A DNA stretch of 64,000 nucleotides, taken from contig NC_042999.1 of the NCBI RefSeq assembly GCF_006345805.1, positions 61,814,001 to 61,878,000 of the forward strand. The letters run 5' to 3'. Source of the stretch: Octopus sinensis. Its lineage: Eukaryota. Made by a program: the position numbers and the translations under genes. Shown piece by piece: positions 513 through 54,897 of the stretch. Within the stretch, counting starts at the first letter, position 1. The number at the start of each line of letters is the position of its first letter. Below the pieces are notes generated by a model that was given only the letters and a program-made list of their open reading frames with translations, ran no database searches and had not been told where the DNA came from.

Positions 513-3500
513 CGGGGACTTTTAAGATGTAAGAAGGAAAATACAGAACTCCGAAATCTATCCACAAACATCGAAAACAAGGACACCCTATGGAGCCAAA
601 GATTTACTAACAAAGAATTGGACTATATCCGAGTAAGTAATACTAATTGAAATTTATTACTATTTTCGAAACGAAATGATGTATTTTGACTCGATATTAT
701 CTCCACCTCTAACACAACACATGTAAACATGCGTGGAACAACACGATCATCCCCGACCTCAAACACCATGTACAAAGGAACTACGAAGAAATTAAATGCC
801 ACCGATACTATTCAACCCAAGAATAACAATCGAGCGGTACGTACATTAAACCTACAACAAAAAATGTACGAAAAACTACACGTGCGAAATAATGTGACAA
901 CAGAAATACACGGACCGGTACCCTACGAAAATGACGACCGTCAAAATAATGGGCCGGACGTTGTACCTCATGTCCTGCAAATAAAACCCAAAAGACGTAA
1001 ATGGACACGTGAGGAATACATTTCTATCTTACACGCATACTTCACAGCAGTACTCTACCCAAAAAATGAAAATACAACAACACATACATATAAAATATGG
1101 AAGGAAAATAATAGAGATATAGACTTGGATACAGCAATGAACCCTAATAAATTAGCTAACGTACGAAGATACATTCTCAACACAAAAAAAATATCAGAAA
1201 TAGAAATAGAACACCTAAAAGAAAACATACACCAGGAAAATGTAGATAGAAGCCACACAACAATGCCCAATAATATAAACACTGAAACTGTAAAACACGA
1301 AGACAATCGCAACATTCCCAACAAACACGATGTAAACAACGAAGGGGAGCCTAATGATTATGATAATATAAAAAATAAAATAATCAAAGAACTGAAAACC
1401 ACAGAGCCCAAAATGGACCACCGACCATACCTCCCAAGAATAAAAATAAACGCAATAACAACACCTATTATAAACAACATAAACCTAGCCGTCACTGAAC
1501 TAGCCACTGAAACAAAAAAAAGTGATATCACTGAGCTAAATGACTTGATATACGCAGCAGCCACTGCAGCCACAAAAGAAGCTGGATACTCACCCAAACC
1601 CGCCCAAACAGGAGTACCACCACCCAAACAAACCCTGTGGATAAATAACATCCAAAACAAAATTTAAAAAATTAGAAAAGACCTGTCGATTCTTAATGAA
1701 ATCAGCAAACAAGCAACGCTACTAAGCAACAAAAAGAGAACAAAAATACTCCGCAAATACAACATCACAGAAAAAGATTTGCCGGAGATAAAAGAAAAGC
1801 TGAAGCAAGATATCCTTGCCAAAGCTCAAAGGATCCGCCGGTACGAGAAACGCCAACGCTTCTTTGAACAGAAAAAAAGTTCAACTCCGACCCCAAAAAG
1901 TTCTACCAAGAACTGGGCAAAAATAAAATAGAAGTCACTGCAGCACCAACGGCAGAAGAATTGGAAGAATTCTGGAGAGAAATATGGTCGGCGAACGAAC
2001 AGCCAAAAAAAAGGAGTATCAGAATAACAAACTCGGCATCTGAACAACTTTGGACCCCCATAACAACTGAAGAGGTCACCCAGGCACTGCAAAAACTAAG
2101 CAACTGGAAGGCACCTGGGCATGACAAGATCCCCAACTTCTGGTTGAAATATCTAACAGGAATGCACAAAAAGCTGGCTGAAAACTTTAACAACGTACTA
2201 GCAGAGCCAGAGACAATGCCTGAATGGCTCACGAAGGGGAAAACCATCTTAATTCCCAAATCAAATGAAACAACAAAACCAGAAAACTACAGACCAATAA
2301 CCTTCCTCCCTACTATGTTCAAGGCATTTACTGCAGTGATATCGCAAAGGCTGAACAAGCACCTGGACGAAAACAAACTGTTCCCAGAAGAGCAAAAGGA
2401 TGCCGCAAAGGCTCATATGGCTGTAAAGATCAACTAATGATTAATAAAGCCGTAACTGAAGACAGCCACAGAAAGAAGAAAGGCCTCAGTATGGCCTGGA
2501 TTGACTACAAAAAGGCGTTTGATAGCATCCCCCACACATGGATCCTCGAAACTCTAGCCATTAACAAAGTAGCACCAACAATCATAAAATTCATAGAGCA
2601 CTCTATGAATAAATGGCAAACAGTCCTACACCTCCAAACAAAAGAGGGACTCATGAAAACCAAAGACATGCCCATTAGAAGAGGAATATTCCAGGGAGAC
2701 ACGCTCTCTCTCACTCCTTTTCTGCTTGGCACTGTCACCTCTATCTGATATGCTAAATAGAACTGGATGCGGATATAAATGTTACGGCAAAACGATCAGC
2801 CACCTTTTATATATGGATGACCTAAAACTATACGCTGCAAATGACAAACAGCTGGAAACACTATTAAGACAGTTCATGGATTTACCAAAGAAATAGATAT
2901 GAAATTTGGATTAGAAAAATGCGCCAAAGTAACCATGAAAAGAGGAAAACTAGTTAAGAGTAACAACATCACACTAGATAAAACCAATGAAATAAAAGAA
3001 TTAGACCAAAGCCAAACTTACAAATACTTAGGAATCCATGAACTAGATAAGACACAACACACACAAGTGAAAGAGAAAATAAAAAAAGAATATTATAGAC
3101 GAGTTAGATCAATACTAAAAACAGAGCTCAATGCTAAAAACAAGATAATAGGTATCACACTTTAGCTGTCCCAGTTATAAGTTACAGCTACAATATCCTT
3201 AACTGGACACGAAATGAACTGTCCAAAATAGATAGGAAAACAAGAAAAAAATACTGACAGGATCTAGGATGCATCACCCAAAATCTGACATAGAAAGACT
3301 ATATATCCAACGTATAGAAGGTGGTAGAGGCCTTATACAGCTGGAAAACTACTATAAAATAACCACCATAGGACTGCAAAATATCTACTTCAGAAGGAAG
3401 GAAAACTGATCCAGATAGCGGCAAAACACGAGCAAAACAAAAAACTGTTCTCAGTATTTAAGGAAGCTGACAAATACAAACAAGAAATCATACCACCTAA

Positions 3501-7369: not shown

Positions 7370-8390
7370 GGCGGCGAGCTGGCAGAATCCTTAGCACGCC
7401 GGGAGAAATGCTTAGCGGTATTTCGTCTGCCGCTACGTTCTGAGTTCAAATTCCGCCGAGGTCGACTTTGCTTTTCATCCTTTCGGAGTCGATAAATTAA
7501 GTACCAACTACGCACTGGGGTCGATGTATTCAACATAATCCCTTTGTCTGTCCTTGTTTGTCCCATCTATGTTTAGCCCCTTGTGGGCAATAAACAAATA
7601 AGAATAAGCACCTGCCATTTAAAAAGGGTGGGATAAGTACTGGAGTCGATTTGTTTGACTAACCCCTTCAAGGCGATACCAAAACATGGCCAAAGTTCAG
7701 TTTCAGTAACGAGAAAAAGGAATCAAAGAAAAAGAAAAGGTGATAACACCTTTTAGATCAGAAGATCGAATGTTTGGACAATATCTGTCTGTCTCTCTAC
7801 ATAAACACCCCCACACACACACGCGCGCGCGCGCGCGCACGTGGGTAGTAAAGACATAGGTATTTCGTCTGCTGTTATGTTCTGAGTTCAAATTCCACCG
7901 AGGTCGACTTTGCCTTTCATCCTTTCGGGGTCGATAACTTAAGTACCAGTTATGCACTGGGGTCTATATAATCGACTTAATCCGTTTGTTTGTCCTTGTT
8001 TGTCCTACCTTGTGGGTAGTAAAGAAATAGGTATTTCGTTCTGACTTCAAATTCCGCCGAGGTCGACTTTGCCATTTATCTTTTCGGGGTCGATAAATTA
8101 AGTACCAGTTGCGTACTAGTGTCGATCGAATCGACTGGTCCCCTCCCTAAAAATTTCGGGCCGTGTGCCTAGAATAGAAAAGAATCGTTAGCACGCCGGA
8201 CAAAATGCTTAGCGGTATTTCATCCGTCTTGTTCAAATGCTCTGAGTTCAAATGCTACCGGCGTCGACTTTGCTTTTCACACTTTCGGGATCGATACATT
8301 AAGTACCAATCAAACACGGTATCGATATAATTGACTAGCCACTTCCCCCAAAAATTCCAGGCCTTGTGCCGATAGAAGAAAAGATTTTCT
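7370..8390 (+). mobile_element. Cluster of SINE family A copies, including head-less tandem bodies
   Basis: A-box-like ggcgagctggcagaa, B-box gagttcaaattcc, and a central domain gtcgactttgcctttcatcctttcggggtcgataaattaagtacc resembling the Deu/Nin SINE domain. Confidence 0.85.
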
Positions 8391-10474: not shown

Positions 10475-11626
10475 CGAGGGGCGTTCAATAAGTAATGCCT
10501 CTGACGCACTTCCCATAGCAGTAGAGCAACGAAACTTGGCACAGTTATTAGTCTTTTTCTACATAGGAACCACTCAGAGTTACACATTTCTCCCATAGTT
10601 TGATGCAACTCTGGAGACCGTTTTTGTAGAAGACCCCAGCTTGGTCCTCCGACCACGACGTGACTTCAGAAATCAAGGCTGCATCATCTGGGAAACGCTT
10701 TCCTTTCAAAAACAACTTCATGGCTGGGAAGAGCTGAAAATCAGAGGGTGCAAGGTCAGGAGAGTAGGGGGATGGGGGAGGAGTTCATAGCCGCACGCCT
10801 GTGCTTCTGATCTGGCGACACGCGAGTTGTAGACCAGAGCGTGTCCTGCAGGAGGAAGATGCCTTTGCTGATCTTGCCCCGCCTCTTGATTTTGATAGCT
10901 TCTCTTAATTTCCTCAAAAGTGAAGCATAATAGGCTCCTGTAATTGTGGTACCCTTTGCCAGGAAATCTGTCATCACAACTCCGTCCTGGTTCCAGAAGA
11001 CTGTGAGCATGACCTTGCCAGCGGAGGGCTGCACCCTTGCCTTCTTTGGAGGAGGTGAGTCACGGTGCTTCCACTGCATTGACTGGGCTTTGGTCTCTGG
11101 ATCATAGTGATGGACCCAGGTTTCATCCGGTGTAATCAGTCTTTTGAAAAATTTTGACTCATCTTCTTGGCACATCTCCAAATTCATCCTCGAGCACTCG
11201 ACGCGTTCTTACTTCTGGAAAGGTGTGAGCAACCTGGGAATCCATCTGGCAGACACCTTTTGCATATGCAAATGGTCATGAATGATAGTTTCCACAGACC
11301 CGGTACTAATCTTGACCTCATGGGCTATTTGGCGAATAGTTATGCGTCGATCTTCCAAAATGGCAGCCTCAACTTGACGGACAGATGCCTCATCAATGGT
11401 AGAAGGGGGGCGACCAGATCTGGGAGCTGTTTCCACAGAGTTCCAACCATGTTTGAATTCACGATGCCAGCATTTTACAAGGTCGTATGATGGGGCATCA
11501 TCACCATAAGTTACTTTCATTTCATCAAAAGTCTCCCGTGGTGTGCGTCCTTTCAAATACAAAAACCGGATCACTGCTCGACACTCAACAGGCTCCATTT
11601 CACACTTGACTCAGTTCAAACACTCG
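10475..11626 (-). mobile_element. mariner (DD34D) transposon, one intact TIR, other end collapsed
   Basis: TA|cgaggggcgttcaataagtaatgcc at 10473-10499. The opposite end shows only ctcg|TA at 11623-11628. Confidence 0.85.
10548..11598 (-). pseudogene. mariner transposase, frameshifted
   Basis: MEPVECRAVIRFL (HTH), RSGRP, ARWIPRLLT, TPDETWVHHYDPE, LLQD, PHPPYSPDLAPSDF (10750-10790 reverse), ending ...SYVEKD stop at 10548-10550. Confidence 0.92.
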
Positions 11627-16883: not shown

Positions 16884-17120
16884 TTAAATAATAATAATGA
16901 TAATAAAGATGATGATAATTATAGTGGTGGTGGTGGTGATGGTGGTGGTGGTGGTGGTAGTAGTAGAAGTAGTAGCAGTAATCTTGGTTGTGGTGGTCGT
17001 GGTAGTGGTGGTCGTCGTGGTGGTCGTGGTCGTCGTCGTGGTCGTCGTCGTCGTCGTGGTGTTGGTGCCGGTGGTGCCGGTGGTGGTGCCGGTGGAGGTG
17101 CCGGTGGCGGCGGCGGCGGC
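16725..17120. repeat. Compound CAG/TAG/TGG/TCG/CGG trinucleotide repeat
   Basis: Direct reading; successive changes of triplet motif. Confidence 0.9.
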
Positions 17121-18530: not shown

Positions 18531-19660
18531 AAGCGGCAAGGGGAGGAGGAGTTGTTATTGCAGTAACAATCGAAGCTCTCTGTACTTTCAGTGGCAAGAT
18601 GTAGGTGAGTTTGTGATAAATCAGTTTTGTTTTATTTTAGTTATTTATTCCTTTCTAGAGTCGGAGATAATACTTCATGACCTCAACGTAGCTTAACTTA
18701 GTTGTTTCACAAAGTTGTGATCTAATATAAGATGACAAATTAATTCTGCATACTATATCCGCTAGAAATCTACACACAAACCTTCCTTAAAATATACTGT
18801 AGCGTTTTTCACATCAGATCATGTATTCAAGATTAATTATGCCTGAAATACCGTGGAAATGTCTTTCATCAACAGCCTGCTCAATTATGATTGACCTGGG
18901 GCTAAATAAACAAGATGAATGAAAGCCACACATTGTATAGTATAGTCCTAGATGCATTATGTCTGAAAAACGACGCAGATGTTATGGCTTGTTCACCTTT
19001 GATCTTAAGTCTGTCGATCAAGTTTGACGTTAGAAAATGTTGCCTGAGATTCATTATGTTGGACAAAAAAGTTCGCAGTTGTGGCTTTAATCATACGTCT
19101 GCTCGATCAGACCCTAGGTTAAACAACAATAACTACAACAAAAACAACAGCAGCAACAACAACAGTGATAATAACTAGGAAGGCATTTTAAGTGTTTCTA
19201 CGTTTGTGTCGGAAAAAAGAGATAATGATCGTGCCTTGAGCGTCATAATTCTGTTTGATCCTTACTGACCTGGTGTTAAACAACAACCACAAGTGCCTTC
19301 TTGTGAATACAATAACAGGCAAATATAAATGTAATGAGTTACGTGAAAATTTGTGTCAAGCCTCCTAAATGTCTTTCAAGGAAAGTTATTTAAATTTAAA
19401 TTCAATAATCTATAAGCGACTGAAGGGCGCAGTACTCCCGCTTTGAGTAGGAGACCATTCCATTGCAGGATTAGCCTCATTTGCTGAGACTCAATCTCAG
19501 CTTAATGGACTGGAGTAATGTAAATTTAATTGTTTTACTCAACAACGCAAGACTTTGCTCGGTCTGTGAATTGAAATCACGACCTCGCGATCATGACTCA
19601 AACACCTCTAATCACAAGGTCACGCGGTTTAACAAGCTACAAGGTTTTCTCTCTTATGCC

Positions 19661-20063
19661 CTTTTATTTGTTTCAGTCATTTGACTGTGGCCATGCTGGA
19701 GCACCGCCTTTAGTCGAGCAAATCGACCCCAGCACTTATTCTTTGTAATCCTAGTACTTATTGTATCGGTTTCTTTTGCCGAAATACTAAGTTACGGGGA
19801 CGTAAACACACCAGCATCGGTTATCAAGCGATGTTGGGGGGGGAACAAACACAGACACACAAACATATACACATGCATGCATTATATATATGTGTATATA
19901 TATATATATATAAACATATATACGATGGGCTTCTTTCAGTTTCCGTCAACCAAATCAACTCAAAAGGCTTTGGTCGGCACGAGGCAATAGTAGAAGACAT
20001 TTGTCCAAGGTGCCACGCAGTGGGACTGAACCCGGAACCATGTGGTTCGTAAGCAAGCTACTT
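19661..20063 (-). mobile_element. SINE family B body, split from its 5' head by the two ORF1-only insertions
   Basis: Reads ...accatgtggttcgtaagcaagctactt and stops; the missing accacacagccac reappears at 24393-24405. Confidence 0.9.
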
Positions 20064-22389
20064 TATTTCATAACATTTGCCATAAAGGCAGTACATAGAG
20101 TAAGTTAGCTTTGCGGGCTGGACGAGGACATTAATGAAATGAATGATAATGAAAGAAAGATGATGGGGATGGGAGAAGACAAGAAGCGCTCGCGACTTCT
20201 GCTTCTCTAAAACATTGTTCTTTTAAAAACAAACACAAAACGAGGTATTAAACCTCTTACAATTTTTACAACTTTTCAATTTTTGGACTTAACAGTCCAT
20301 TACTAACAACAATATAGTTCAATAATTACATATGATATAAATACAATACACAAAGCCCCTCCTCCCAGACCTGGCTTAGACTTCCCTTAGGAATGCGCCA
20401 GCTCTAGGTCGGGGCCCCTCAAGTCGTATCACAATTTATGACTCGTCCTCAAAATAACTTGTGCCCGCATCCTCCACCATCCACCACGCCTCCCTCAGAA
20501 TGTAATCGAGTTCCGAGTTAGCGTCGCCCGCGACCAAGCTATAATGCTCATTGAGCTCCTTCAGCCCAAGCGTCACGTCGAACGCCACGGCCTCCACAGC
20601 TACCTGCGGTGGCCATTCAGGGTCCTGTGTGAAGGCTAAAGGTGCTCCCTTGTGGTGCTTTTCCATCACCTTTTCAATCTCTCCGCCTCTATGGAAGAGG
20701 ATCAATACATCGTTTTTGCTCGGGTGCGGGATATTCAATTCTTTCGTTGGCGGCACAGTTCCCGCCAACGGTGTTTCTTCTCCTGTCGGGGGCACAACCC
20801 CAACCGACGCAGTTCCGGGACATTCAGGTACTATGTCACCGACTGCCGGTAATGTCCCGTTTCTCTTCTTTTTCTTTTCTTTCTTTTCAACTGAGCGAGG
20901 GTGCGTCTCCTCTGTAGCCGGAAGATTCGCCTTTCCCTCCTCATCCCTAGTATCATTTGGTGAGCACCCATTGTTGCTCACCTTCCTCTTTCGGCCTCTG
21001 TTTGAGGAGTCCTCCGCTTCCTCGGCCGTTTTCATTCCCTCTTCTACAGGGGTTTCACTTAACTGTTCCGAGATCCTATTTTGTTCCCGGGGACAGTTCT
21101 TCTTTATATGGCCGGACTCCAAGAACCGATGACACTTAGGGGTGGCGACCCTCAAGCATCACCGGGTACCTGCACCCGGCCATTTTAAAAAAATCTGGAA
21201 GAACCAGATTGGTTGATTGGGTCCAAAGGGTCAAAATTGCTTTTGACCCAACCCAAGCAGCCGCAGGAAGAACTTTCACATTAAGGAGCTTAGTTTCGCT
21301 GCTACCCAGACCTCGGCGGATAGTCTCCTCTATCCACTCGGGTTTTATCCCGGGTGGCAGCCCGCAAATCCATGCTTTCGTCAGTCTCTTTTTTTGGTAC
21401 GTGGGCAGGAATAAAATTTCCTTACCCTCCAGGGGTTTACTAGCAAATTTGCAAGCCTCTTCAGGGGTGTCAAATAGCAACCACACCGTTGCATATTTGA
21501 CACCCCTGGAAATGAATTTAATTGTTGGCAAATACTCTGCCAACTCCTTTTCAATTGCCGTCTTTTCGAATAGGGCGATGGTGTCGAGTGCCTTGGAGTA
21601 GGTTCTCAACACCAACGTCCTATCTTCACGGTCTTTTAACCACTTTTTAGGCGGTATGATCTCCCATTCCAAAATTTTGTCATTTTTCATTGCCATGTTT
21701 TTTTTTAAATATATTCAAATTAAACTTAAAAAGCGAGAAGAAAAAAAGTTCAAAAGTCCAAATAAAATTTGATAGATTTTTGAAAAAAAAAGGGGAAAGC
21801 ACAACAGAAGGGAAGAAATCAACGGAAAGTCGCAATAAACAAAAAAAAATAAAAGGGGGAGTTAAATGAAGTTCAGAAGAAAGTTAATAAACAGAAAAAC
21901 ACAACAAAAATCTTCTGGCCTTACGGTACTCCCGGCCTGAGTTGAACCTGGAACGCCGCAACTGGAACACAACCTCCACAAAAATGGGTCCAAAAGGTAA
22001 TCCAAAAGTGGTTTATTCTTATAATTTTCTTGCGAAATACTCCGACAAAGGAATAAATTCAACAAACCCAACCACAGCACTGGCCACCGCCAACGGTAAT
22101 TTTAACAGTAACTGTATTGGGTTCCGAGGATACGCCCCTCCACTGTTTTTTTTTTCAATAAACACAAAAACAGCAGCCGCCGAGAGCAGGCGTAATTTTC
22201 TCAGAGTTGGACACAACTTACTGAAATAATAATTAGCACGCAATAAATTAAGCCCAACTCACAATAAACAAAATCACTCACCTCGACAACTTTCTGTTTT
22301 TGGTCTTTTTTCTATAATTGGACGGAGCTCGTTAACTCACGTCCACTCTGGCTCAACAGGAAGCAACTGACTAACTGCGCATGTGTGTT
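20064..22389 (-). mobile_element. ORF1-only non-autonomous non-LTR retroelement, copy 1 (Tx1/L1-like gag, no RT)
   Basis: Bounded by agcaagctactt at 20052-20063 and 22390-22401. 3' end ...gttatgaaata; T-rich 5' UTR; single gag-like frame; no room for ORF2. Confidence 0.8.
20436..21696 (-). CDS. Gag/ORF1-like protein (RRM-like region, degenerate zinc knuckle, basic linker, unknown C-terminal domain) in two frames joined by a +1 shift at ~21140
   Basis: ORFs 21136-21696 and 20436-21155. WICGLPPGIKPEWIEETI...LPDFFKMAGCRYPVMLEGRHP / KCHRFLESGHIKKNCP fits Tx1/L1-type ORF1 architecture. Clear homology to 22613-23814. Confidence 0.7.
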
Positions 22390-22401
22390 AGCAAGCTACT
22401 T

Positions 22402-24381
22402 TATTTCATAAGATTTGCCACTAGAGCAGTACATAGAATAGCTGCGGGCTGGACAAAAAACATTAATGAATGATGGTGATGGACGAAGATGGTGATGGGA
22501 GAAGACAAGAGCGCCCGCCGACCCTCGCTTCTCTAAGACATTGTTCCTTTTTTTTTTAATTTCACAAAATTTTCAAATTTTCTTTTTCAATTCAATATAA
22601 TGTTCAATAAGTCTATGTTACCCGGCCGACCAGCGCTCTTGCCTCAACGAAGCAATCATCGCTGGTCAGGTCGTGGTCTAGAGGTATAATTTGAAATGTG
22701 TCCATCGGGAAGGAATGCGTGATCCTTCCCAGATTACCCCTCCCTATGACCTCCGCAGCCAGCTGCGAAGGCCACTCGGGGTCCTCCGTGCAGGACCGAA
22801 GTCCCTCCCAATGGCCCCGCTTTCTCATTTTACTCATCTCACCTTCCACTGTTCCACCTTTAAAAAAGAGGACCACAAATTGTTCCACAAGTTGTTCCTC
22901 AGGCGGAACACCCGCCTGAGAAGACTTGGGAGACGCCGTCTGCGTATCACAATCCGCCGGCGGCGTCCCGTTTCTCCTCTTCCTTTTCTTCTTTTTACCT
23001 TGGGCTGCGGGAGGTTGAGGTTGAGGTATTGCACACAACGGGTTCTCTTCTTCTCCCGCAGCTTCCGGGTCTTTTGGTGGGTCGCCATTGCTCCCCACTT
23101 TTCTCTTTCTCGTTGAAGAAGTCGTCGCTTCCCCGCTCTGTTTCTCTCCCTCCATGGCGGGGCGGCAGGGAGAGGCTCCGATATCAACTGCTCCAGGATC
23201 CTACTTTGGTCCCTGGGGCATTTTTTTTAATATGGCCGGTCTCCAGGAACAGGTGACACTTGGGGGGGGCGTCCCTCAAGCATCACCGGATACCTGTACC
23301 CGGCCATCCTCAAGAAGTCCGGCAAAACCAGACTTTTGGCTGATTGGGTCCATAGGGTCAAAGTAGCTTTTGACCCCTCCCAATCAGCCGCAGGCTGTAC
23401 TCTTACGTTTAGGAGCTTGGCGCTGCTACCACCCAGACCCCGGCGTATAGAGTCCTCTATCCACTCGGGTTCAACGCCGAGTGGTAAGCCGCAGATCCAA
23501 GCTCTCAACAATTTTTGTCATTTGTAATTAGGGAGGAATAATATCTCCTTGCCCTCAATGGGCTTGCTTGCAAAGTCGCAAGCTGCTTTAGGGGAGTCAA
23601 ACAGCAACCAAACCGTTGCGTATTTGACTCCCCGTGCGATGTATTTAACGGCTGGCATATAGTCTGCCAGCTCGTTAACAATAGTGGCCTTTGGAAAGAC
23701 AGCTATGGTGTTGAGCGACTTTGAATAAGTCCTCAACACCACGGTCTTGTCCTCTAGCTCTTTCAGATATCCTTTGGGAGGTGTCAACTCCCATATGGTG
23801 AACTCCTTTGCCATAACAAAAGTTCAAGAAACAGTTCAACGTGATAAAATAAAATAGACAAAAAAGGAGAATAAAAAACAGAACAGAAGGGAAGAAACAA
23901 AATTCGAAACAGTAGTTCAAAAAAGTTTTTAAAATAAAAGATAGCAGAAGAGAGTTCAAAATCCAGGCAAAGGAATTAATTTTTTTCTTTTTCTTTTTTC
24001 CCCGGCCAAAAAGGTATTCCAGGCCACTGGTAATTCACTTGTGAAAATAATCCCTGGTACTCCGTTGGTAAATCCGAAGACAAAGGCAATTACACACGTT
24101 AATTTTTGAGGTGGGGCTACGCCTCCTCAAAAAAACACAATTCTCACTACAAAGTGAGTCTTTATATTCGACCACAGGCAGAAAAAATGTCTGGAGCAAA
24201 GTGGAGTTTATTACCCGCTAAAAAATATTAAATGCTAAAAAACATTAAATGCAAGCAATAAACTTCACTAAGCTCCTAAAAATACAAAACGCCTACCTGC
24301 AGTCGAGTCAAAAGTTCAACAATTCACGTTGAAACACGTGACAACTGGAGCAGCAAAAAAACACGTCTCAACACGTCAGTG
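22402..24381 (-). mobile_element. ORF1-only non-autonomous retroelement, copy 2 (diverged, more decayed)
   Basis: Bounded by the target repeat at 22390-22401 and gcaagctactt at 24382-24392. Same 3' tail as copy 1. Confidence 0.8.
22613..23814 (-). pseudogene. ORF1-like pseudogene paralogous to 20436-21696
   Basis: RGVKYATVWLLFD, WICGLP, LPDFLRMAGYRYPVMLEGRPP, KCHLFLETGHIKK, DPEWPSQLAAE. In-frame TGA at 23518-23520 and several homopolymer frameshifts. Confidence 0.8.
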
Positions 24382-24405
24382 GCAAGCTACTTACCACACA
24401 GCCAC
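24382..24405 (-). other. Target-site duplicate plus displaced 5' head of the SINE at 19661-20063
   Basis: gcaagctacttaccacacagccac is exactly the continuation seen in intact copies (e.g. 46286-46306, 49577-49598). Confidence 0.85.
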
Positions 24406-24444
24406 AGTGAAGCTTGTAAAAGACAATGTACGGCATGAATGAAC

Positions 24445-24770
24445 TTTACCTTTCATCCTTTCGGGGTCGATTAATTAAGTACCAGTTACGCACTGGGGTC
24501 GATGTAATCGACTTAATCCCTCTGTCTGTTCTTGTTTGTCCCCTCTGAGTTTAGCCCCTTGTGGGTAGTAAAGAAATAGGTATTTCGTCTGCCGTTAAGT
24601 TCTGAGATCAAATTCCGCCGAGGTCGACTTTGCCTCTCATCCTTCCGGAGTCGATTAAATAATTACCAGTTACGCACTGGGGTCGATATAATCGACTTAA
24701 TCTGTTTTTCTGTCCTTGTCTGTCCTCTGTGTGTTTAGCCCCCTATGGGCAGTAAAGAAATAGGTATCAT
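24445..24770 (+). mobile_element. SINE family A, two tandem bodies
   Basis: Repeated ttcatcctttcggggtcga...gtagtaaagaaataggtat. Confidence 0.85.
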
Positions 24771-25472
24771 TATTTTACTCAGAGTTAGTGGTGAGAGAAA
24801 CCTGGGGGGATGGACACGTCTCGGAGAAGGTTGGTTATATCCACACCCGGAGACCACGGGCGGGTGAGTCTCTCCGTGTCTCCCACTGCGCCCGGCTACG
24901 ATGGCCCGCGGTCGAAGGAGCGGTGCGTTGACTCGGATGATAACATTCAGGTGTGGGCCCACTACCGTGGCCACTCTTCGGATCCGACCCTTCGGCCAAC
25001 TCATGAAACTGCATAGGCACCGTTCTCTGGACATGATGTAGAAACTTATTTATTAATGTAATGTGCTGTATCTTGCTAATACATGAATGGCACGAGCAGT
25101 TGTAGCTTCGTAATGTTCTCGATGAGTTCTCAAACCATCTCCTTACAATAAATCCAACATGGAATAACCGGGAAGCAAAAGAAAAATGTTTCTTTCCTGA
25201 ATTGTTGTTGTTGTTTTTGTTGTTGTTGTTCTTCTTCCTCTTCTTGCTGCTGCTGTTGTTGTTGTTGTTGTTGTTTTTGTTAATAAAGACAATGTTAATG
25301 ATGTTCTTCATCTTGTTATTTTATCATTCTTTTTGACATTGCTGTTGTTTTTCTCGTTACCTTTGTTCGTTCTTGCTCCTGCTGTCGCTTAGCTCCGGAT
25401 CAGTTCTGATCAAGTCGGGCTATGAGAAATAAATTCAATCCTTCAACATTTTTTTCTTTCCAACACCACATC

Positions 25473-25903
25473 GGCATAGAAGTGGCTGTGTGGTAAGTAG
25501 CTTGCTTACCAGCCACATGGTTCCGGGTTCAGACCTACTGCGTGGCACGTTGGGCAAGTGTCTTCTACTATAGCCGCGGGCCGACCAAAGCCTTGTGAGT
25601 GGATTTGGTAGACGGAAACTGAAAGAAGCCCGTCGTATATATGTATGTATATATATATATGTGTGTATGTGTGTGTATATGTTTGTGTGTCTGTATTTGT
25701 CCCCCCAACATCGCTTGACAACCGATGCTGGTGTGCTTACGTCCCCGTAACTTAGCCGGTTCGGCAAAAGAGACCGATAGCATAAGTACTAGGCTTACAA
25801 AGAATAAGTCCTGGGGTCGATGTGCTCGACTAAAGGTGGTGCTCCAGCATGGCCACAGTCAAATGACTGAAACAAGTAAAAGAGTAAAAGAGAGTAAAAG
25901 AGT
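25473..25903 (+). mobile_element. SINE family B, full length
   Basis: Head through the gtaaaagag tail. Confidence 0.88.
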
Positions 25904-26208
25904 ATAGGGCCACGTAACCCAATATGATTCCTTAGCTAAGAGAGTGGATTCGCTGGATTGCTAGAATATATTTGTTCCGGTTCTTTAGCGTTCTGAATTG
26001 TTTGTGATGCTAAGTCATCAGCTGGTTTCAACCACCATCAGGTTCCTTGGTATCTTTAAGAGGTATAGTTTTCACAGAAACTTCTTCTTTCCACACAAGT
26101 TAATGACATTCAACAAGGAACAAGAAATACTCACACTGATATATTGATCAAATACCTAGAACTGTACTATTACTGTACACACAAGCATGCGAAACTACAT
26201 GCTTATTA

Positions 26209-53990: not shown

Positions 53991-54897
53991 GGCACTCGGC
54001 AAGGTTGCATCCAGTCACCAGCAGCCTTCAACATGTACGCTGAAAAGGCCATGAGGAACGCAGGCCTGGAGGATAGCAGCATTGGAGTGAGGGACTGGAG
54101 GAAGAAATATTAATAACCTTCGCTATGCAGATGATACAACCCTGCTGACGGAGAGTGGTAAGGATCTGGAGGATCTTGTCCTGCTGGTCAAGAAAGTGAG
54201 TGAGAAATTTGGGCTGTACCTCAATGTTAAGAAAACGAAGATCATGTCAACAGCAGCCACAACAAACATCAGCATCAAGATTGATAATGAAGAGATTGAA
54301 ATGGTTGATGATTTCATCTTCCTTGGCTCCAAAATAAATCGAGATGGTGACTGCACTCCAGAAATAAGACGGCGGATAGTACTAGGCAGAGAGGCAATGG
54401 TCAGCATGAGCAGGGTATGGAAGAGTAGAGACATCAGACTCGCTACCAAATGCAGGTTGGTGAATGCAATTGTTTTCTCAATAGCAACATATGGATGCGA
54501 GACCTGGACACTAAAGAAAGCTGACCAGAAGAGAATTAATGCATTCGAGCTTTGGTGTTGGAGAGGACTTTTGCGGATTCCATGGACAGCGAGGCTCACC
54601 AATGGAGAAGTTCTTAAGCAGATAAGGCCGAAAATGTCGCTAGAAGCTGGGATCACCAAGCGTAGTTTGGCATATTTCGGTCATATTATGCGGAGAGAAT
54701 CCCTGGAGAAGGACATCATGCTCGGAATGGTCAGTGGCAAGAGGGGAAGAGGCCGACCAAGAACCCTCTGGCTTGACACCATCAGGAGTGATACCGGAAT
54801 GGACATGGCCAATCTGAAGGAAGCGGCCCAGGATAGAACTGACTGGATGACACTGATCCAGCGAGTGACCGAGAGTCGACTTCGACTGAGCGGATAG
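53991..54897 (+). pseudogene. 5'-truncated RTE-clade LINE (RT C-terminal half)
   Basis: RQGCIQSP, NINNLRYADDTTL, GLYLNVKKTKIM, YGCETWTLKKADQKRINAFELWCWR, GKRGRGRPRTLWLD; one +1 shift near 54092. Confidence 0.92.

What the first reader, a model, noticed from the sequence alone, without database searches (positions are those of the whole stretch)
20052..24405. Two RT-less, ORF1-only retroelements inserted in tandem at the same base of a SINE tRNA head
Seen: in SINE sense the locus reads gtggctgtgtggt-AAGTAGCTTGC-[copy 2]-AAGTAGCTTGCT-[copy 1]-AAGTAGCTTGCTtacg. The target motif occurs three times (20052-63, 22390-401, 24382-92), both elements end at the same nucleotide, and both are co-oriented with the SINE. 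The copies are clearly diverged, so these are two separate insertions rather than a duplication. Each encodes only a Tx1/L1-type gag. Known: Tx1-clade LINEs are often sequence-specific, some for tRNA or snRNA loci; ORF1-only parasites exist (HAL1, HeT-A). Inference: a site-specific non-autonomous family that targets the head of a very abundant SINE just after its A box. It would be a parasite of a parasite, likely disabling the SINE's Pol III promoter while using it as a safe harbour. I do not recognise this as described.
Basis: partly seen in the sequence, partly recalled or inferred. Interest (0 to 1): 0.88.

Follow-up and report, generated by a model that had tools for sequence, protein, structure and literature searches.

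The report
Gag-only retroelements targeting an octopus SINE
Two diverged copies of a small retroelement that encodes only an RNA-binding "gag" protein (no reverse transcriptase) sit head-to-tail at the same 12-base site inside an abundant octopus SINE; this is a new example of the known habit of some LINE lineages of landing at one precise sequence in another repeat.

Summary
On the minus strand the locus reads SINE head, AAGTAGCTTGC, copy 2, AAGTAGCTTGCT, copy 1, AAGTAGCTTGCT, rest of SINE. Joining the flanks rebuilds an intact SINE. The copies are two insertions, not a duplication: their 5' UTRs barely align, and the ORF differs mainly at third codon positions (dN/dS about 0.2). Two non-orthologous Octopus sinensis copies have the same 5' junction in the SINE head, so four of four 5' junctions and two of two 3' junctions agree. 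Each copy encodes one decayed protein of about 420 aa, with tandem RRM domains, a CCHC knuckle, a basic linker and a C-terminal domain. There is no EN or RT, LTR or TIR. The protein's distant relatives are ORF1s of complete octopus LINEs of the L1/Tx1 group. Those LINEs are themselves target-specific and form head-to-tail arrays. The principle is not new: Tx1-type elements and their dependants are known to target other transposons, with tandem insertions sandwiching the target-site duplication. The autonomous partner was not found, and the genome-wide specificity could not be measured. New in passing are a conserved 20-bp RNA hairpin inside the ORF and a recurrent +1 frame offset.

The parts
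24393..24409 (-). 5' part of the host SINE head (…CACTGTGGCTGTGTGGT), including the A-box-like TGGCTGTGTGG
   Evidence: Matches positions 10-33 of the SINE head consensus at 100%. Aligns with seven other SINE copies in the window.
24382..24392 (-). Target motif, copy a (AAGTAGCTTGC, 11 nt), upstream of copy 2
22402..24381 (-). Copy 2: ORF1-only element, 1980 bp, the more decayed of the two (several frameshifts, one in-frame stop)
   Evidence: Alignment A1, blastn, tblastn pieces in three frames.
22390..22401 (-). Target motif, copy b (AAGTAGCTTGCT), sandwiched between the two elements
   Evidence: Part of the 54-nt direct repeat D6.
20064..22389 (-). Copy 1: ORF1-only element, 2326 bp. It comprises a 5' UTR of about 690 nt, a coding region of about 1260 nt and a 3' UTR of about 370 nt.
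20052..20063 (-). Target motif, copy c (AAGTAGCTTGCT), continuous with the rest of the SINE
19645..20051 (-). Rest of the host SINE (TACGAACCACATGGTTCCGGGTTCAGTCCC…), with the B-box-like GGTTCAGTCCC now about 4.3 kb from the A-box-like motif
   Evidence: Positions 23-171 of the head consensus at 94%. About 400 nt match SINE copies in L002.
21136..21696 (-). Copy 1, open frame for the tandem RRM module (186 aa), ending at CCC TAA
   Evidence: AlphaFold model pLDDT 89.8. Best PDB matches are tandem-RRM proteins such as SFPQ/NONO and hnRNP A1 UP1.
20436..21155 (-). Copy 1, +1 frame: CCHC-type knuckle (KCHRFLESGHIKKNC, second Cys replaced by Phe), K/R-rich linker and C-terminal domain (…DPEWPPQ…)
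   Evidence: No Pfam match.
22613..23814 (-). Copy 2 coding remnants: 23518-23814 (RRM1), 23227-23511 (RRM2), the knuckle near 23220-23264, and 22613-23155 (linker and C-domain)
21462..21508 (-). 20-bp RNA hairpin inside the RRM1 coding sequence of copy 1. The equivalent in copy 2 is at 23589-23635.
   Evidence: Inverted repeat I2. MFE -34.7 and -30.9 kcal/mol with z about -7. 95% of cells paired, two pairs changed on both sides and three sense-strand G-U pairs across four copies.
20064..20224 (-). Conserved 3' tail of copy 1, 77% identical to 22402-22550 of copy 2. It ends in a 4-bp hairpin followed by AAATGTTATGAAATA.

Best explanation
Shown: the locus records two independent, sequential insertions of two diverged subfamilies of a non-autonomous, ORF1-only non-LTR retroelement family of octopods. 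Inferred: the family descends from, and is mobilised in trans by, a target-specific LINE of the L1/Tx1 group. Mechanism, inferred from established target-primed reverse transcription: a sequence-specific AP-type endonuclease nicks the bottom strand of the SINE head at GGT^AAGTAGC, that is 5'-…CTACTT^ACC-3' on the bottom strand. The element RNA, which ends in …UGAAAUA, is reverse-transcribed from that nick. The top strand is cut 12-13 nt downstream, after GCT(T), which produces the AAGTAGCTTGCT target-site duplication. Each insertion regenerates the target on both sides. A second element can therefore land in one of the duplicates, giving a head-to-tail pair that sandwiches the 12-mer. The element supplies only its own tandem-RRM/CCHC RNA-binding protein, which was under purifying selection while the lineages were active. 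It must borrow endonuclease and reverse transcriptase. Both window copies are now dead. The insertion separates the A-box-like and B-box-like motifs of the SINE by 4.3 kb, which should inactivate that SINE copy (inferred).
For: Anatomy and an intact empty site.

Independent insertions. The 5' UTRs are about 50% identical with 145 gap columns. Differences in the N-domain by codon position are 0.19/0.14/0.42. dS is about 1.0 and dN/dS is 0.17.

Site specificity. L001 (O. sinensis CM016886) reads GGCTGTGTGGTAAGTAGCTTGCT|TCCTGTGCATGCG. L002 (CM016865) reads GCCGTGTGGTAAGAAGTTTGCT|TCCACTGCGCATG. The flanks are not orthologous to the window. By contrast, 18 SINE heads in the 220 kb held are uninterrupted.

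No EN or RT in the elements, and no LTR or TIR.

ORF1 nature. The model is a tandem RRM fold. An intact CX2CX4HX4C knuckle is present in the L002 copy, and Pfam zf-CCHC is found in relatives.

Lineage. An exhaustive profile search gives 56 relatives, and all named ones are octopod proteins. Those whose loci were fetched are ORF1s of full LINEs. L003 has Exo_endo_phos and zf-RVT ORFs, L004 has ORF1 followed by long ORFs with EN- and RT-like sequence, and L005 has an ORF2 carrying EN, RT and zf-RVT.

The same behaviour in the relatives. The L003 LINE is flanked on both sides by (ATT)n. L004 and L005 hold head-to-tail arrays of three to five LINEs with a repeated junction motif.

Precedent. SINEU-3, mobilised by Tx1-Mar, inserts into Mariner-N4_AMi, with tandem copies sandwiching a TSD that were read as sequential insertions (PMC4494074).
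Against: Only four copies of the family could be examined, and both O. sinensis copies have lost their 3' ends, so 3' junctions come from the window alone. No EN+RT element with this target or this tail was found. The sequence similarity of the 3' tail to the tails of the full LINEs is not above shuffles (146/2000 and 381/2000); only a 4-bp hairpin is shared. Tx1 versus L1 could not be decided, because the element has no RT. The C-terminal domain shows no constraint between copy 1 and L002 (dN/dS 1.0). All copies carry frameshifts, so it is not proven that the full 420-aa protein was needed.
Confidence: 0.75

Rival explanations
1. A single insertion was followed by tandem duplication through unequal crossing-over on the 12-mer or on the element, and the two halves then diverged neutrally.
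For: The arrangement is a direct tandem with a shared junction motif.
Against: Neutral decay would affect all regions and codon positions equally. Instead the 5' UTRs are essentially unalignable, while the ORF is 75% identical with a 2-3 fold excess of third-position changes and dN/dS 0.17. Copy 1 is closer to an O. sinensis copy at another locus (79%) than to its neighbour (75%).
Confidence: 0.02
2. The shared 5' junction reflects descent rather than targeting. The SINE head would be carried as part of the element, by 5' transduction from a master copy sitting in a SINE or by template switching onto SINE RNA, so most copies start with a SINE head wherever they land.
For: In L001 and L002 only the 5' junction survives and no SINE remainder is seen downstream. 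5' extensions and 5' additions of small-RNA sequence are documented for Tx1-mobilised SINEU (PMC4494074).
Against: In the window the sequence after each element's 3' end continues the SINE exactly, with a 12-nt duplication. The piece between the two elements is only the 12-mer and not a whole SINE head, so at least these two events are insertions into that site. The L001 and L002 elements are visibly truncated: L001 ends inside the C-terminal domain coding region and L002 ends just after the stop codon.
Confidence: 0.08
3. There is no discrete ORF1-only family. Each 2-kb unit would be an independently and internally deleted copy of a full-length SINE-targeting LINE.
For: No intact master copy was seen. 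All four copies are decayed. Internal-deletion derivatives of LINEs are common (PMC4494074).
Against: Copy 1 and the L002 copy end the ORF at the same stop (…EDAGTS…*). Copies 1 and 2 belong to subfamilies separated by dS of about 1, yet both go from the same C-terminal domain into a homologous 3' tail with no ORF2 remnant. Independent deletions would not share these limits. The exhaustive protein search found no closer ORF1 attached to an ORF2.
Confidence: 0.12
4. The target choice is made by the element RNA rather than by a dedicated endonuclease. Transcripts from master copies in SINE heads would read through into the downstream AAGUAGCUUGCU… and anneal to SINE heads nicked at TT^A by an ordinary L1-like endonuclease. 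Homology would then guide priming.
For: The bottom-strand nick site CTACTT^ACC contains the TT^A core preferred by L1-type endonucleases, and the element has no poly(A) tail. No partner with this target was found. From established knowledge, read-through target sequence helps precise priming in R1- and R2-type elements.
Against: There is no direct evidence. The related full LINEs each show their own distinct targets, which fits endonuclease-encoded specificity as shown for Tx1L (cited in PMC4494074).
Confidence: 0.08

Closest known systems
Tx1-clade target-specific LINEs and their dependants: Tx1L in the Tx1D piggyBac element of Xenopus, and Tx1-Mar with SINEU-3 in Mariner-N4_AMi of crocodilians (PMC4494074)
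   Same: An AP-endonuclease LINE lineage inserts at one precise sequence inside another, abundant transposon. Non-autonomous elements share the target. Tandem copies sandwiching a TSD arise by sequential insertion. The TSD is 12-16 nt.
   Different: Here the target is the head of a SINE rather than a DNA transposon. The dependant is a 2-kb protein-coding ORF1-only element rather than a short non-coding SINE-like unit. The host is a cephalopod. Tx1-clade membership is untested, because there is no RT and the partner is unknown.
HAL1 (half-L1) of mammals (own knowledge; mentioned in PMC5753468)
   Same: A non-autonomous LINE derivative that keeps ORF1 and lacks ORF2, propagating as a family of its own.
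   Different: HAL1 ORF1p is the coiled-coil/RRM/CTD type without a knuckle. HAL1 ends in poly(A) and is not site-specific.
HeT-A of Drosophila telomeres (own knowledge)
   Same: A gag-only non-LTR element with a dedicated landing place. It forms head-to-tail arrays and depends on reverse transcriptase supplied in trans.
   Different: HeT-A belongs to the Jockey clade. It attaches to chromosome ends without endonuclease nicking or TSDs, and it has a host-beneficial role.
tRNA-gene-specific non-LTR elements: NeSL-1_TV (tRNA-Pro), and LIN15_SM and LIN25_SM (tRNA-Arg, tRNA-Glu) (PMC4640811)
   Same: Insertion at a fixed position inside a Pol III-transcribed tRNA-type sequence.
   Different: Those elements carry restriction-like endonucleases in a single ORF, are autonomous, and target real tRNA genes. 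Here the target is a degenerate SINE head that tRNA detectors do not recognise.

Membership tests
Non-LTR (LINE-type, TPRT) retroelement | Target-site duplication flanking a unit with a fixed 3' end, and no LTRs or TIRs | tested here: met
   A 12-nt duplication occurs three times. Both 3' ends are identical (…TTATGAAATA). No terminal direct or inverted repeats are present.
Non-LTR (LINE-type, TPRT) retroelement | Encodes a reverse transcriptase | tested here: not met
   tblastn with a related octopus ORF2 finds nothing in 20052-24405, and Pfam finds nothing. The element is therefore non-autonomous.
LINE ORF1p of the RRM + CCHC type (L1/Tx1 group) | RRM fold(s) followed by a CX2CX4HX4C knuckle | tested here: met
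   The model has pLDDT 89.8 and matches tandem-RRM structures. The knuckle is intact in the L002 copy and degenerate in the window copies. zf-CCHC is present in relatives.
LINE ORF1p of the RRM + CCHC type (L1/Tx1 group) | Homologues sit upstream of an APE-endonuclease/RT ORF2 | tested here: met
   In L003, L004 and L005 the ORF1 relatives (tblastn E 1e-15 to 1e-25 against the copy-1 protein) are followed by Exo_endo_phos, RVT_1 and zf-RVT.
Tx1 clade | RT-domain phylogeny places the element within Tx1 rather than L1 | not testable with these tools
   The element has no RT. No named Tx1 reference sequences were available, and hits to the related ORF2 carry no clade names. Published repeat annotations list 'L1-Tx1' in octopus (PMC13282606, PMC8967140).
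Sequence-specific retrotransposon | Independent copies share the same target nucleotide | tested here: met
   Four of four 5' junctions and two of two 3' junctions agree, at three non-orthologous loci in what are probably two species; the window's species is unidentified.
Sequence-specific retrotransposon | The majority of all genomic copies lie in the target | not testable with these tools
   No octopus genome can be searched by DNA here. Two metagenome scans found nothing.
HAL1-like ORF1-only non-autonomous family | Multiple copies share one ORF1-only architecture with common ends | tested here: inconclusive
   Copies 1 and 2 share ends and architecture. L002 shares the stop codon. L001 and L002 are truncated. 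The sample is four copies.
HAL1-like ORF1-only non-autonomous family | An autonomous parent or partner with matching 5' and 3' ends exists | tested here: inconclusive
   None was found. The nearest ORF1 is only about 30% identical, and the tail similarity is not significant.
tRNA-derived SINE (host element) | The head is recognisable as a tRNA | tested here: not met
   ARAGORN finds no tRNA in the window. Rfam gives no tRNA match at E<=1 over 19000-26000, a range that includes an intact head. A-box-like and B-box-like motifs and an acceptor-stem-like complementarity were seen by eye only.

The most novel reading that the evidence does not exclude
The gag-only family may be more than a passive hitch-hiker. 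It may carry its own cis-acting apparatus, and through it may redirect a borrowed LINE enzyme to the SINE head, so that a non-autonomous element determines its own landing site. That apparatus would be a 20-bp sense-strand RNA hairpin embedded in the RRM1 coding sequence, which is absent at that strength from the autonomous relatives, and a possible programmed +1 frameshift at CCC-UAA-G between the RRM module and the knuckle.
Probability: 0.12. Interest if true: 0.8.

Novelty: new variant of a known kind. Interest (0 to 1): 0.5.

Why it matters
Target-specific LINEs are the natural models for how a retroelement can be aimed at one DNA sequence, and the Tx1 group is the least studied of them outside vertebrates. 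Three things would follow if the family is confirmed.

- SINEs would join the list of "safe-harbour" targets, which so far holds rDNA, snRNA and tRNA genes, microsatellites and DNA transposons.
- It would show that an ORF1-only parasite can persist under selection within a target-specific system.
- It would be a TE-on-TE interaction that inactivates copies of the most abundant repeat class of octopus genomes, where SINEs make up about 12% of O. vulgaris (PMC13282606).

The related full LINEs seen here, with their several different precise targets, suggest a radiation of endonuclease specificities in octopods that could be mined for programmable insertion.

Tried and rejected
- Pfam on five ORF pieces gave no match. 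A PDB sequence search gave nothing meaningful.
- The word-indexed protein search, with a single sequence and with a profile, found only two O. sinensis proteins.
- A metagenome DNA pattern scan and a protein-guided metagenome scan both found nothing.
- The first AlphaFold run, on 419 aa with a 3-sequence alignment, was useless (pLDDT 33). It was replaced by a run on the 212-aa N-terminal part with 49 sequences.
- Looking up the window's 186-aa ORF in public assemblies gave no record, so the window's species remains unidentified.
- One ORF2 relative (L007) lies in a genome without this SINE and was uninformative.
- The C-terminal domain was tested as a possible remnant of ORF2. It has no similarity to the ORF2s of L003-L006.
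- The tail was tested for sequence similarity to the LINE tails. It is not above shuffles, so I do not claim a shared tail, only a small shared hairpin.
- A 5'-truncated SINE next to the L005 array was checked as a possible second target case and rejected, because it has the opposite orientation and a different break-point.
- The tandem-duplication explanation was rejected on codon-position evidence.


Full report
**1. The observation**

Read on the minus strand, the locus is as follows.

- Host SINE head, …CACTGTGGCTGTGTGGT (24409-24393).
- AAGTAGCTTGC (24392-24382).
- Copy 2 (24381-22402, 1980 bp).
- AAGTAGCTTGCT (22401-22390).
- Copy 1 (22389-20064, 2326 bp).
- AAGTAGCTTGCT (20063-20052).
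- Rest of the SINE, TACGAACCACATGGTTCCGGGTTCAGTCCC….

The 11-mer with up to one mismatch occurs 13 times in the window against 1.07 expected by chance. Outside the locus, the exact matches are all in heads of the same SINE family. Joining the two flanks in a script gives a continuous SINE collinear with seven other copies in the window. Both elements end in …TTATGAAATA immediately before the motif, and both have the orientation of the SINE. There are no terminal direct or inverted repeats. The upstream motif copy lacks its last T. The "tRNA head" label is not backed by ARAGORN or by the Rfam tRNA model; it rests on A-box-like and B-box-like motifs read by eye.

**2. Two insertions, not a duplication**

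The copies align at 75% over about 610 nt of coding sequence and 77% over the last 160 nt. Their 5' UTRs of 550-690 nt are about 50% identical with 145 gap columns, which is effectively unalignable. In the N-terminal coding region the differences fall 0.19/0.14/0.42 on codon positions 1/2/3. Nei-Gojobori estimates give dS of about 1.0 and dN/dS 0.17. Most of the divergence therefore accumulated while the protein was under selection, that is in active lineages before insertion. Copy 1 is also closer to a copy at another locus in Octopus sinensis (79%) than to its neighbour.

**3. What each unit encodes**

Each unit has one conceptual ORF of about 420 aa, broken in every copy by frameshifts or stops. 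Pfam finds nothing in the window pieces.

An AlphaFold model of the first 212 residues, built with a 49-sequence alignment, has pLDDT 89.8. Its best PDB matches are tandem-RRM proteins such as SFPQ/NONO, hnRNP A1 UP1 and IMP3 RRM12.

A knuckle follows. It is an intact CX2CX4HX4C in the L002 copy (RCYRCLESGHIKKNC) and has one Cys replaced by Phe in the other three copies. Next come a K/R-rich linker and a conserved C-terminal domain (…DPEWPxQ…), which has no detectable relatives.

A related octopus ORF2 finds no EN or RT similarity anywhere in 20052-24405. "RT-less, gag-only" is correct.

**4. Relatives and lineage**

The word-indexed search found only two O. sinensis proteins. An exhaustive profile search of 1.84 billion representatives found 56 relatives. 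The next best after the family itself is at 1e-19, and all named relatives come from octopods: O. bimaculoides, O. sinensis, O. vulgaris and Argonauta hians. Their loci show what they are.

- In L003 the relative is followed by Exo_endo_phos and zf-RVT ORFs.
- In L004 and L005, ORF1 relatives that are 25-32% identical to the copy-1 protein (tblastn E down to 5e-25) precede long ORFs with EN- and RT-like sequence. The database relatives of the intact 1132-aa ORF2 of L005 carry PF03372, PF00078 and PF13966.

This is the ORF1 + APE-EN/RT/zinc-finger layout of the L1/Tx1 group. I could not separate Tx1 from L1. Published octopus repeat annotations list "L1-Tx1" families (PMC13282606, PMC8967140).

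**5. Site specificity**

The two O. sinensis copies of the family itself both start in a SINE head at the same place. L001 reads …GGCTGTGTGGTAAGTAGCTTGCT|TCCTGTGCATGCG…, and L002 reads …GCCGTGTGGTAAGAAGTTTGCT|TCCACTGCGCATG…. Their wider flanks match the window only through dispersed repeats, so the loci are not orthologous. Both have lost their 3' parts. Thus four of four 5' junctions and two of two 3' junctions agree to within 1-2 nt. The 5' ends of the elements themselves are related (CCACTGCGCATG…), so these are full-length copies with a defined start. In the 220 kb of octopus DNA I held, 18 other SINE heads span the site uninterrupted.

The related full LINEs behave in the same way, each with its own target.

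- The L003 element is flanked on both sides by (ATT)n.
- L004 and L005 hold head-to-tail arrays of three to five LINEs, whose junctions repeat a short motif such as …ACTGAATACTCGTCAT.

**6. Mechanism**

Shown: a 12-nt target-site duplication, a fixed 3' end, near-fixed 5' ends, the same site in independent copies, and tandem copies sandwiching the duplication.

Inferred from established target-primed reverse transcription:

- The bottom strand is nicked at 5'-…CTACTT^ACC-3'.
- Priming takes place on RNA ending in …UGAAAUA.
- The top strand is cut 12-13 nt downstream.
- The duplicated target is then re-used by a second element.

This is the interpretation given for tandem SINEU-3 copies in Mariner-N4_AMi, mobilised by Tx1-Mar (PMC4494074). 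The enzyme must come in trans, and I did not find the partner. The 3' 160 nt are the best conserved non-coding part, which fits a recognition role. However, the tail's sequence similarity to the tails of the full LINEs is not above shuffles. Only a 4-bp hairpin just before the terminal A-rich stretch is shared, with two pairs changed on both sides across 12 tails. Splitting the A-box-like and B-box-like motifs by 4.3 kb should silence that SINE copy (inferred).

**7. Rivals**

- Tandem duplication is excluded by the codon-position evidence.
- A carried-along SINE head, through 5' transduction or template switching, could explain L001 and L002. It cannot explain the window, where the SINE continues exactly after the 3' ends and only 12 nt separate the elements.
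- Independent internal deletions of a full LINE are unlikely, because two subfamilies separated by dS of about 1 share the same limits. With four copies this is not closed.
- RNA-guided homing through read-through target sequence is possible and untested.

**8. Comparison and novelty**

It works like Tx1-type target-specific LINEs and their dependants. In its coding content it resembles HAL1, and in being a gag-only element with a dedicated landing place it resembles HeT-A. I did not find a description of a SINE head as the dedicated target, of an ORF1-only member in such a system, or of this octopod family in the papers searched. The searchable library is incomplete and Repbase could not be consulted. 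I rate it a new variant of a known kind, of moderate interest.

**9. Seen in passing**

(a) A 20-bp hairpin with a 6-nt loop lies inside the RRM1 coding sequence in all four copies. Its MFE is -35 to -19 kcal/mol and its z-score is as low as -7. 95% of cells are paired, two pairs changed on both sides, and three G-U pairs exist only on the sense strand. The homologous stretch of the autonomous relatives folds weakly.

(b) In three of four copies the knuckle is in the +1 frame relative to the RRM module, at the same codon boundary. In copy 1 the context is CCC-UAA-G. Skipping one base restores the EGRxP-xC spacing of the in-frame relatives. Whether this is a programmed frameshift or a set of homopolymer indels is open.

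(c) A second SINE type in the window forms head-to-tail dimers in 6 of 11 cases, and its tail clearly resembles the tails of the L004/L005 LINEs.

Noticed in passing
window 21462-21508 (-) and 23589-23635 (-); L001 10189-10235; L002 16626-16672: A 20-bp RNA hairpin with a 6-nt loop is embedded in the RRM1 coding sequence (…RGVKYATVWLLFDTP…) of all four copies. Its MFE is about -35 kcal/mol with z about -7. Two pairs show compensatory double changes, and three G-U pairs exist only in the sense strand. The homologous region of the autonomous LINE relatives folds much more weakly. It could be a cis-acting signal or a small-RNA precursor.
   Followed up: yes
window 21135-21147 (copy 1), 23260-23271 (copy 2); L002 about 16985-17000; L001 about 10553-10565: The CCHC knuckle is in the +1 frame relative to the tandem-RRM module at the same codon boundary in three of four copies. 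Copy 1 reads CAC CCC TAA G, a slippery Pro codon followed by a stop. Only the L001 copy, with one C fewer, is in frame. Skipping one base gives the spacing seen in in-frame relatives. Programmed +1 frameshift versus homopolymer indels is unresolved.
   Followed up: partly
window 24431-24764, and tails ending at 8029, 18155, 58769, 58951, 62232 (+) and 59574, 59391 (-): A second SINE type has a unit of about 185 bp (GGTATTTCGTCTGCCGTTA…GTGGGTAGTAAAGAAATA). In 6 of 11 cases its tail is followed directly by the 5' end of another unit, giving head-to-tail dimers, and most tails are followed by GGTAT/AGTAT. Its tail closely resembles the 3' tails of the full LINEs in L004 and L005, which are likely partners.
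   Followed up: partly
L003 9700-15370; L004 2470-20850; L005 4440-19200: Full L1/Tx1-type LINEs of O. sinensis and O. vulgaris show precise targets. One is flanked on both sides by (ATT)n. The others form head-to-tail arrays of three to five copies from related families, with a repeated junction motif: ACTGAATACTCGTCAT and GATGTGATATAATGA in L004, and AGGACGTTACTTTGAC in L005.
   Followed up: partly
window 22377-22387 (copy 1 5' end); L001 9494-9503; L002 15742-15752: The first 15-25 nt of the elements contain a GCGCATGCGC-like palindrome, which resembles an NRF1-type Pol II promoter motif. It could be an internal promoter at the extreme 5' end. This rests on my recollection of the motif and was not tested.
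   Followed up: no
L002 10001-36638 (protein P0002); L001 10001-10846 (protein P0001): Two O. sinensis RefSeq gene models are built on decayed copies of this element. P0002 is a chimera of 46 residues of this ORF1 with an integrase (rve) fragment from another element. These are probably annotation artefacts.
   Followed up: no
window 729-2437 (+), 54196-54897 (+), 10756-11187 (-): The window holds other transposon remnants. There are LINE ORFs with RT-like sequence at 1961-2437 (30% identical to the L005 ORF2), an RT C-terminal fragment at 54196-54897, and a mariner-like transposase fragment at 10756-11187. The last two were read by eye from the translations.
   Followed up: no
window 20052-24405 versus the SINE heads at 25473, 49607 and 60374: Neither ARAGORN nor the Rfam tRNA model recognises any head of this SINE family as a tRNA. 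The head does show GCGCAG…CUGCGU acceptor-like complementarity by eye. The parent tRNA is unknown, so whether real tRNA genes carry the 12-mer could not be asked.
   Followed up: partly
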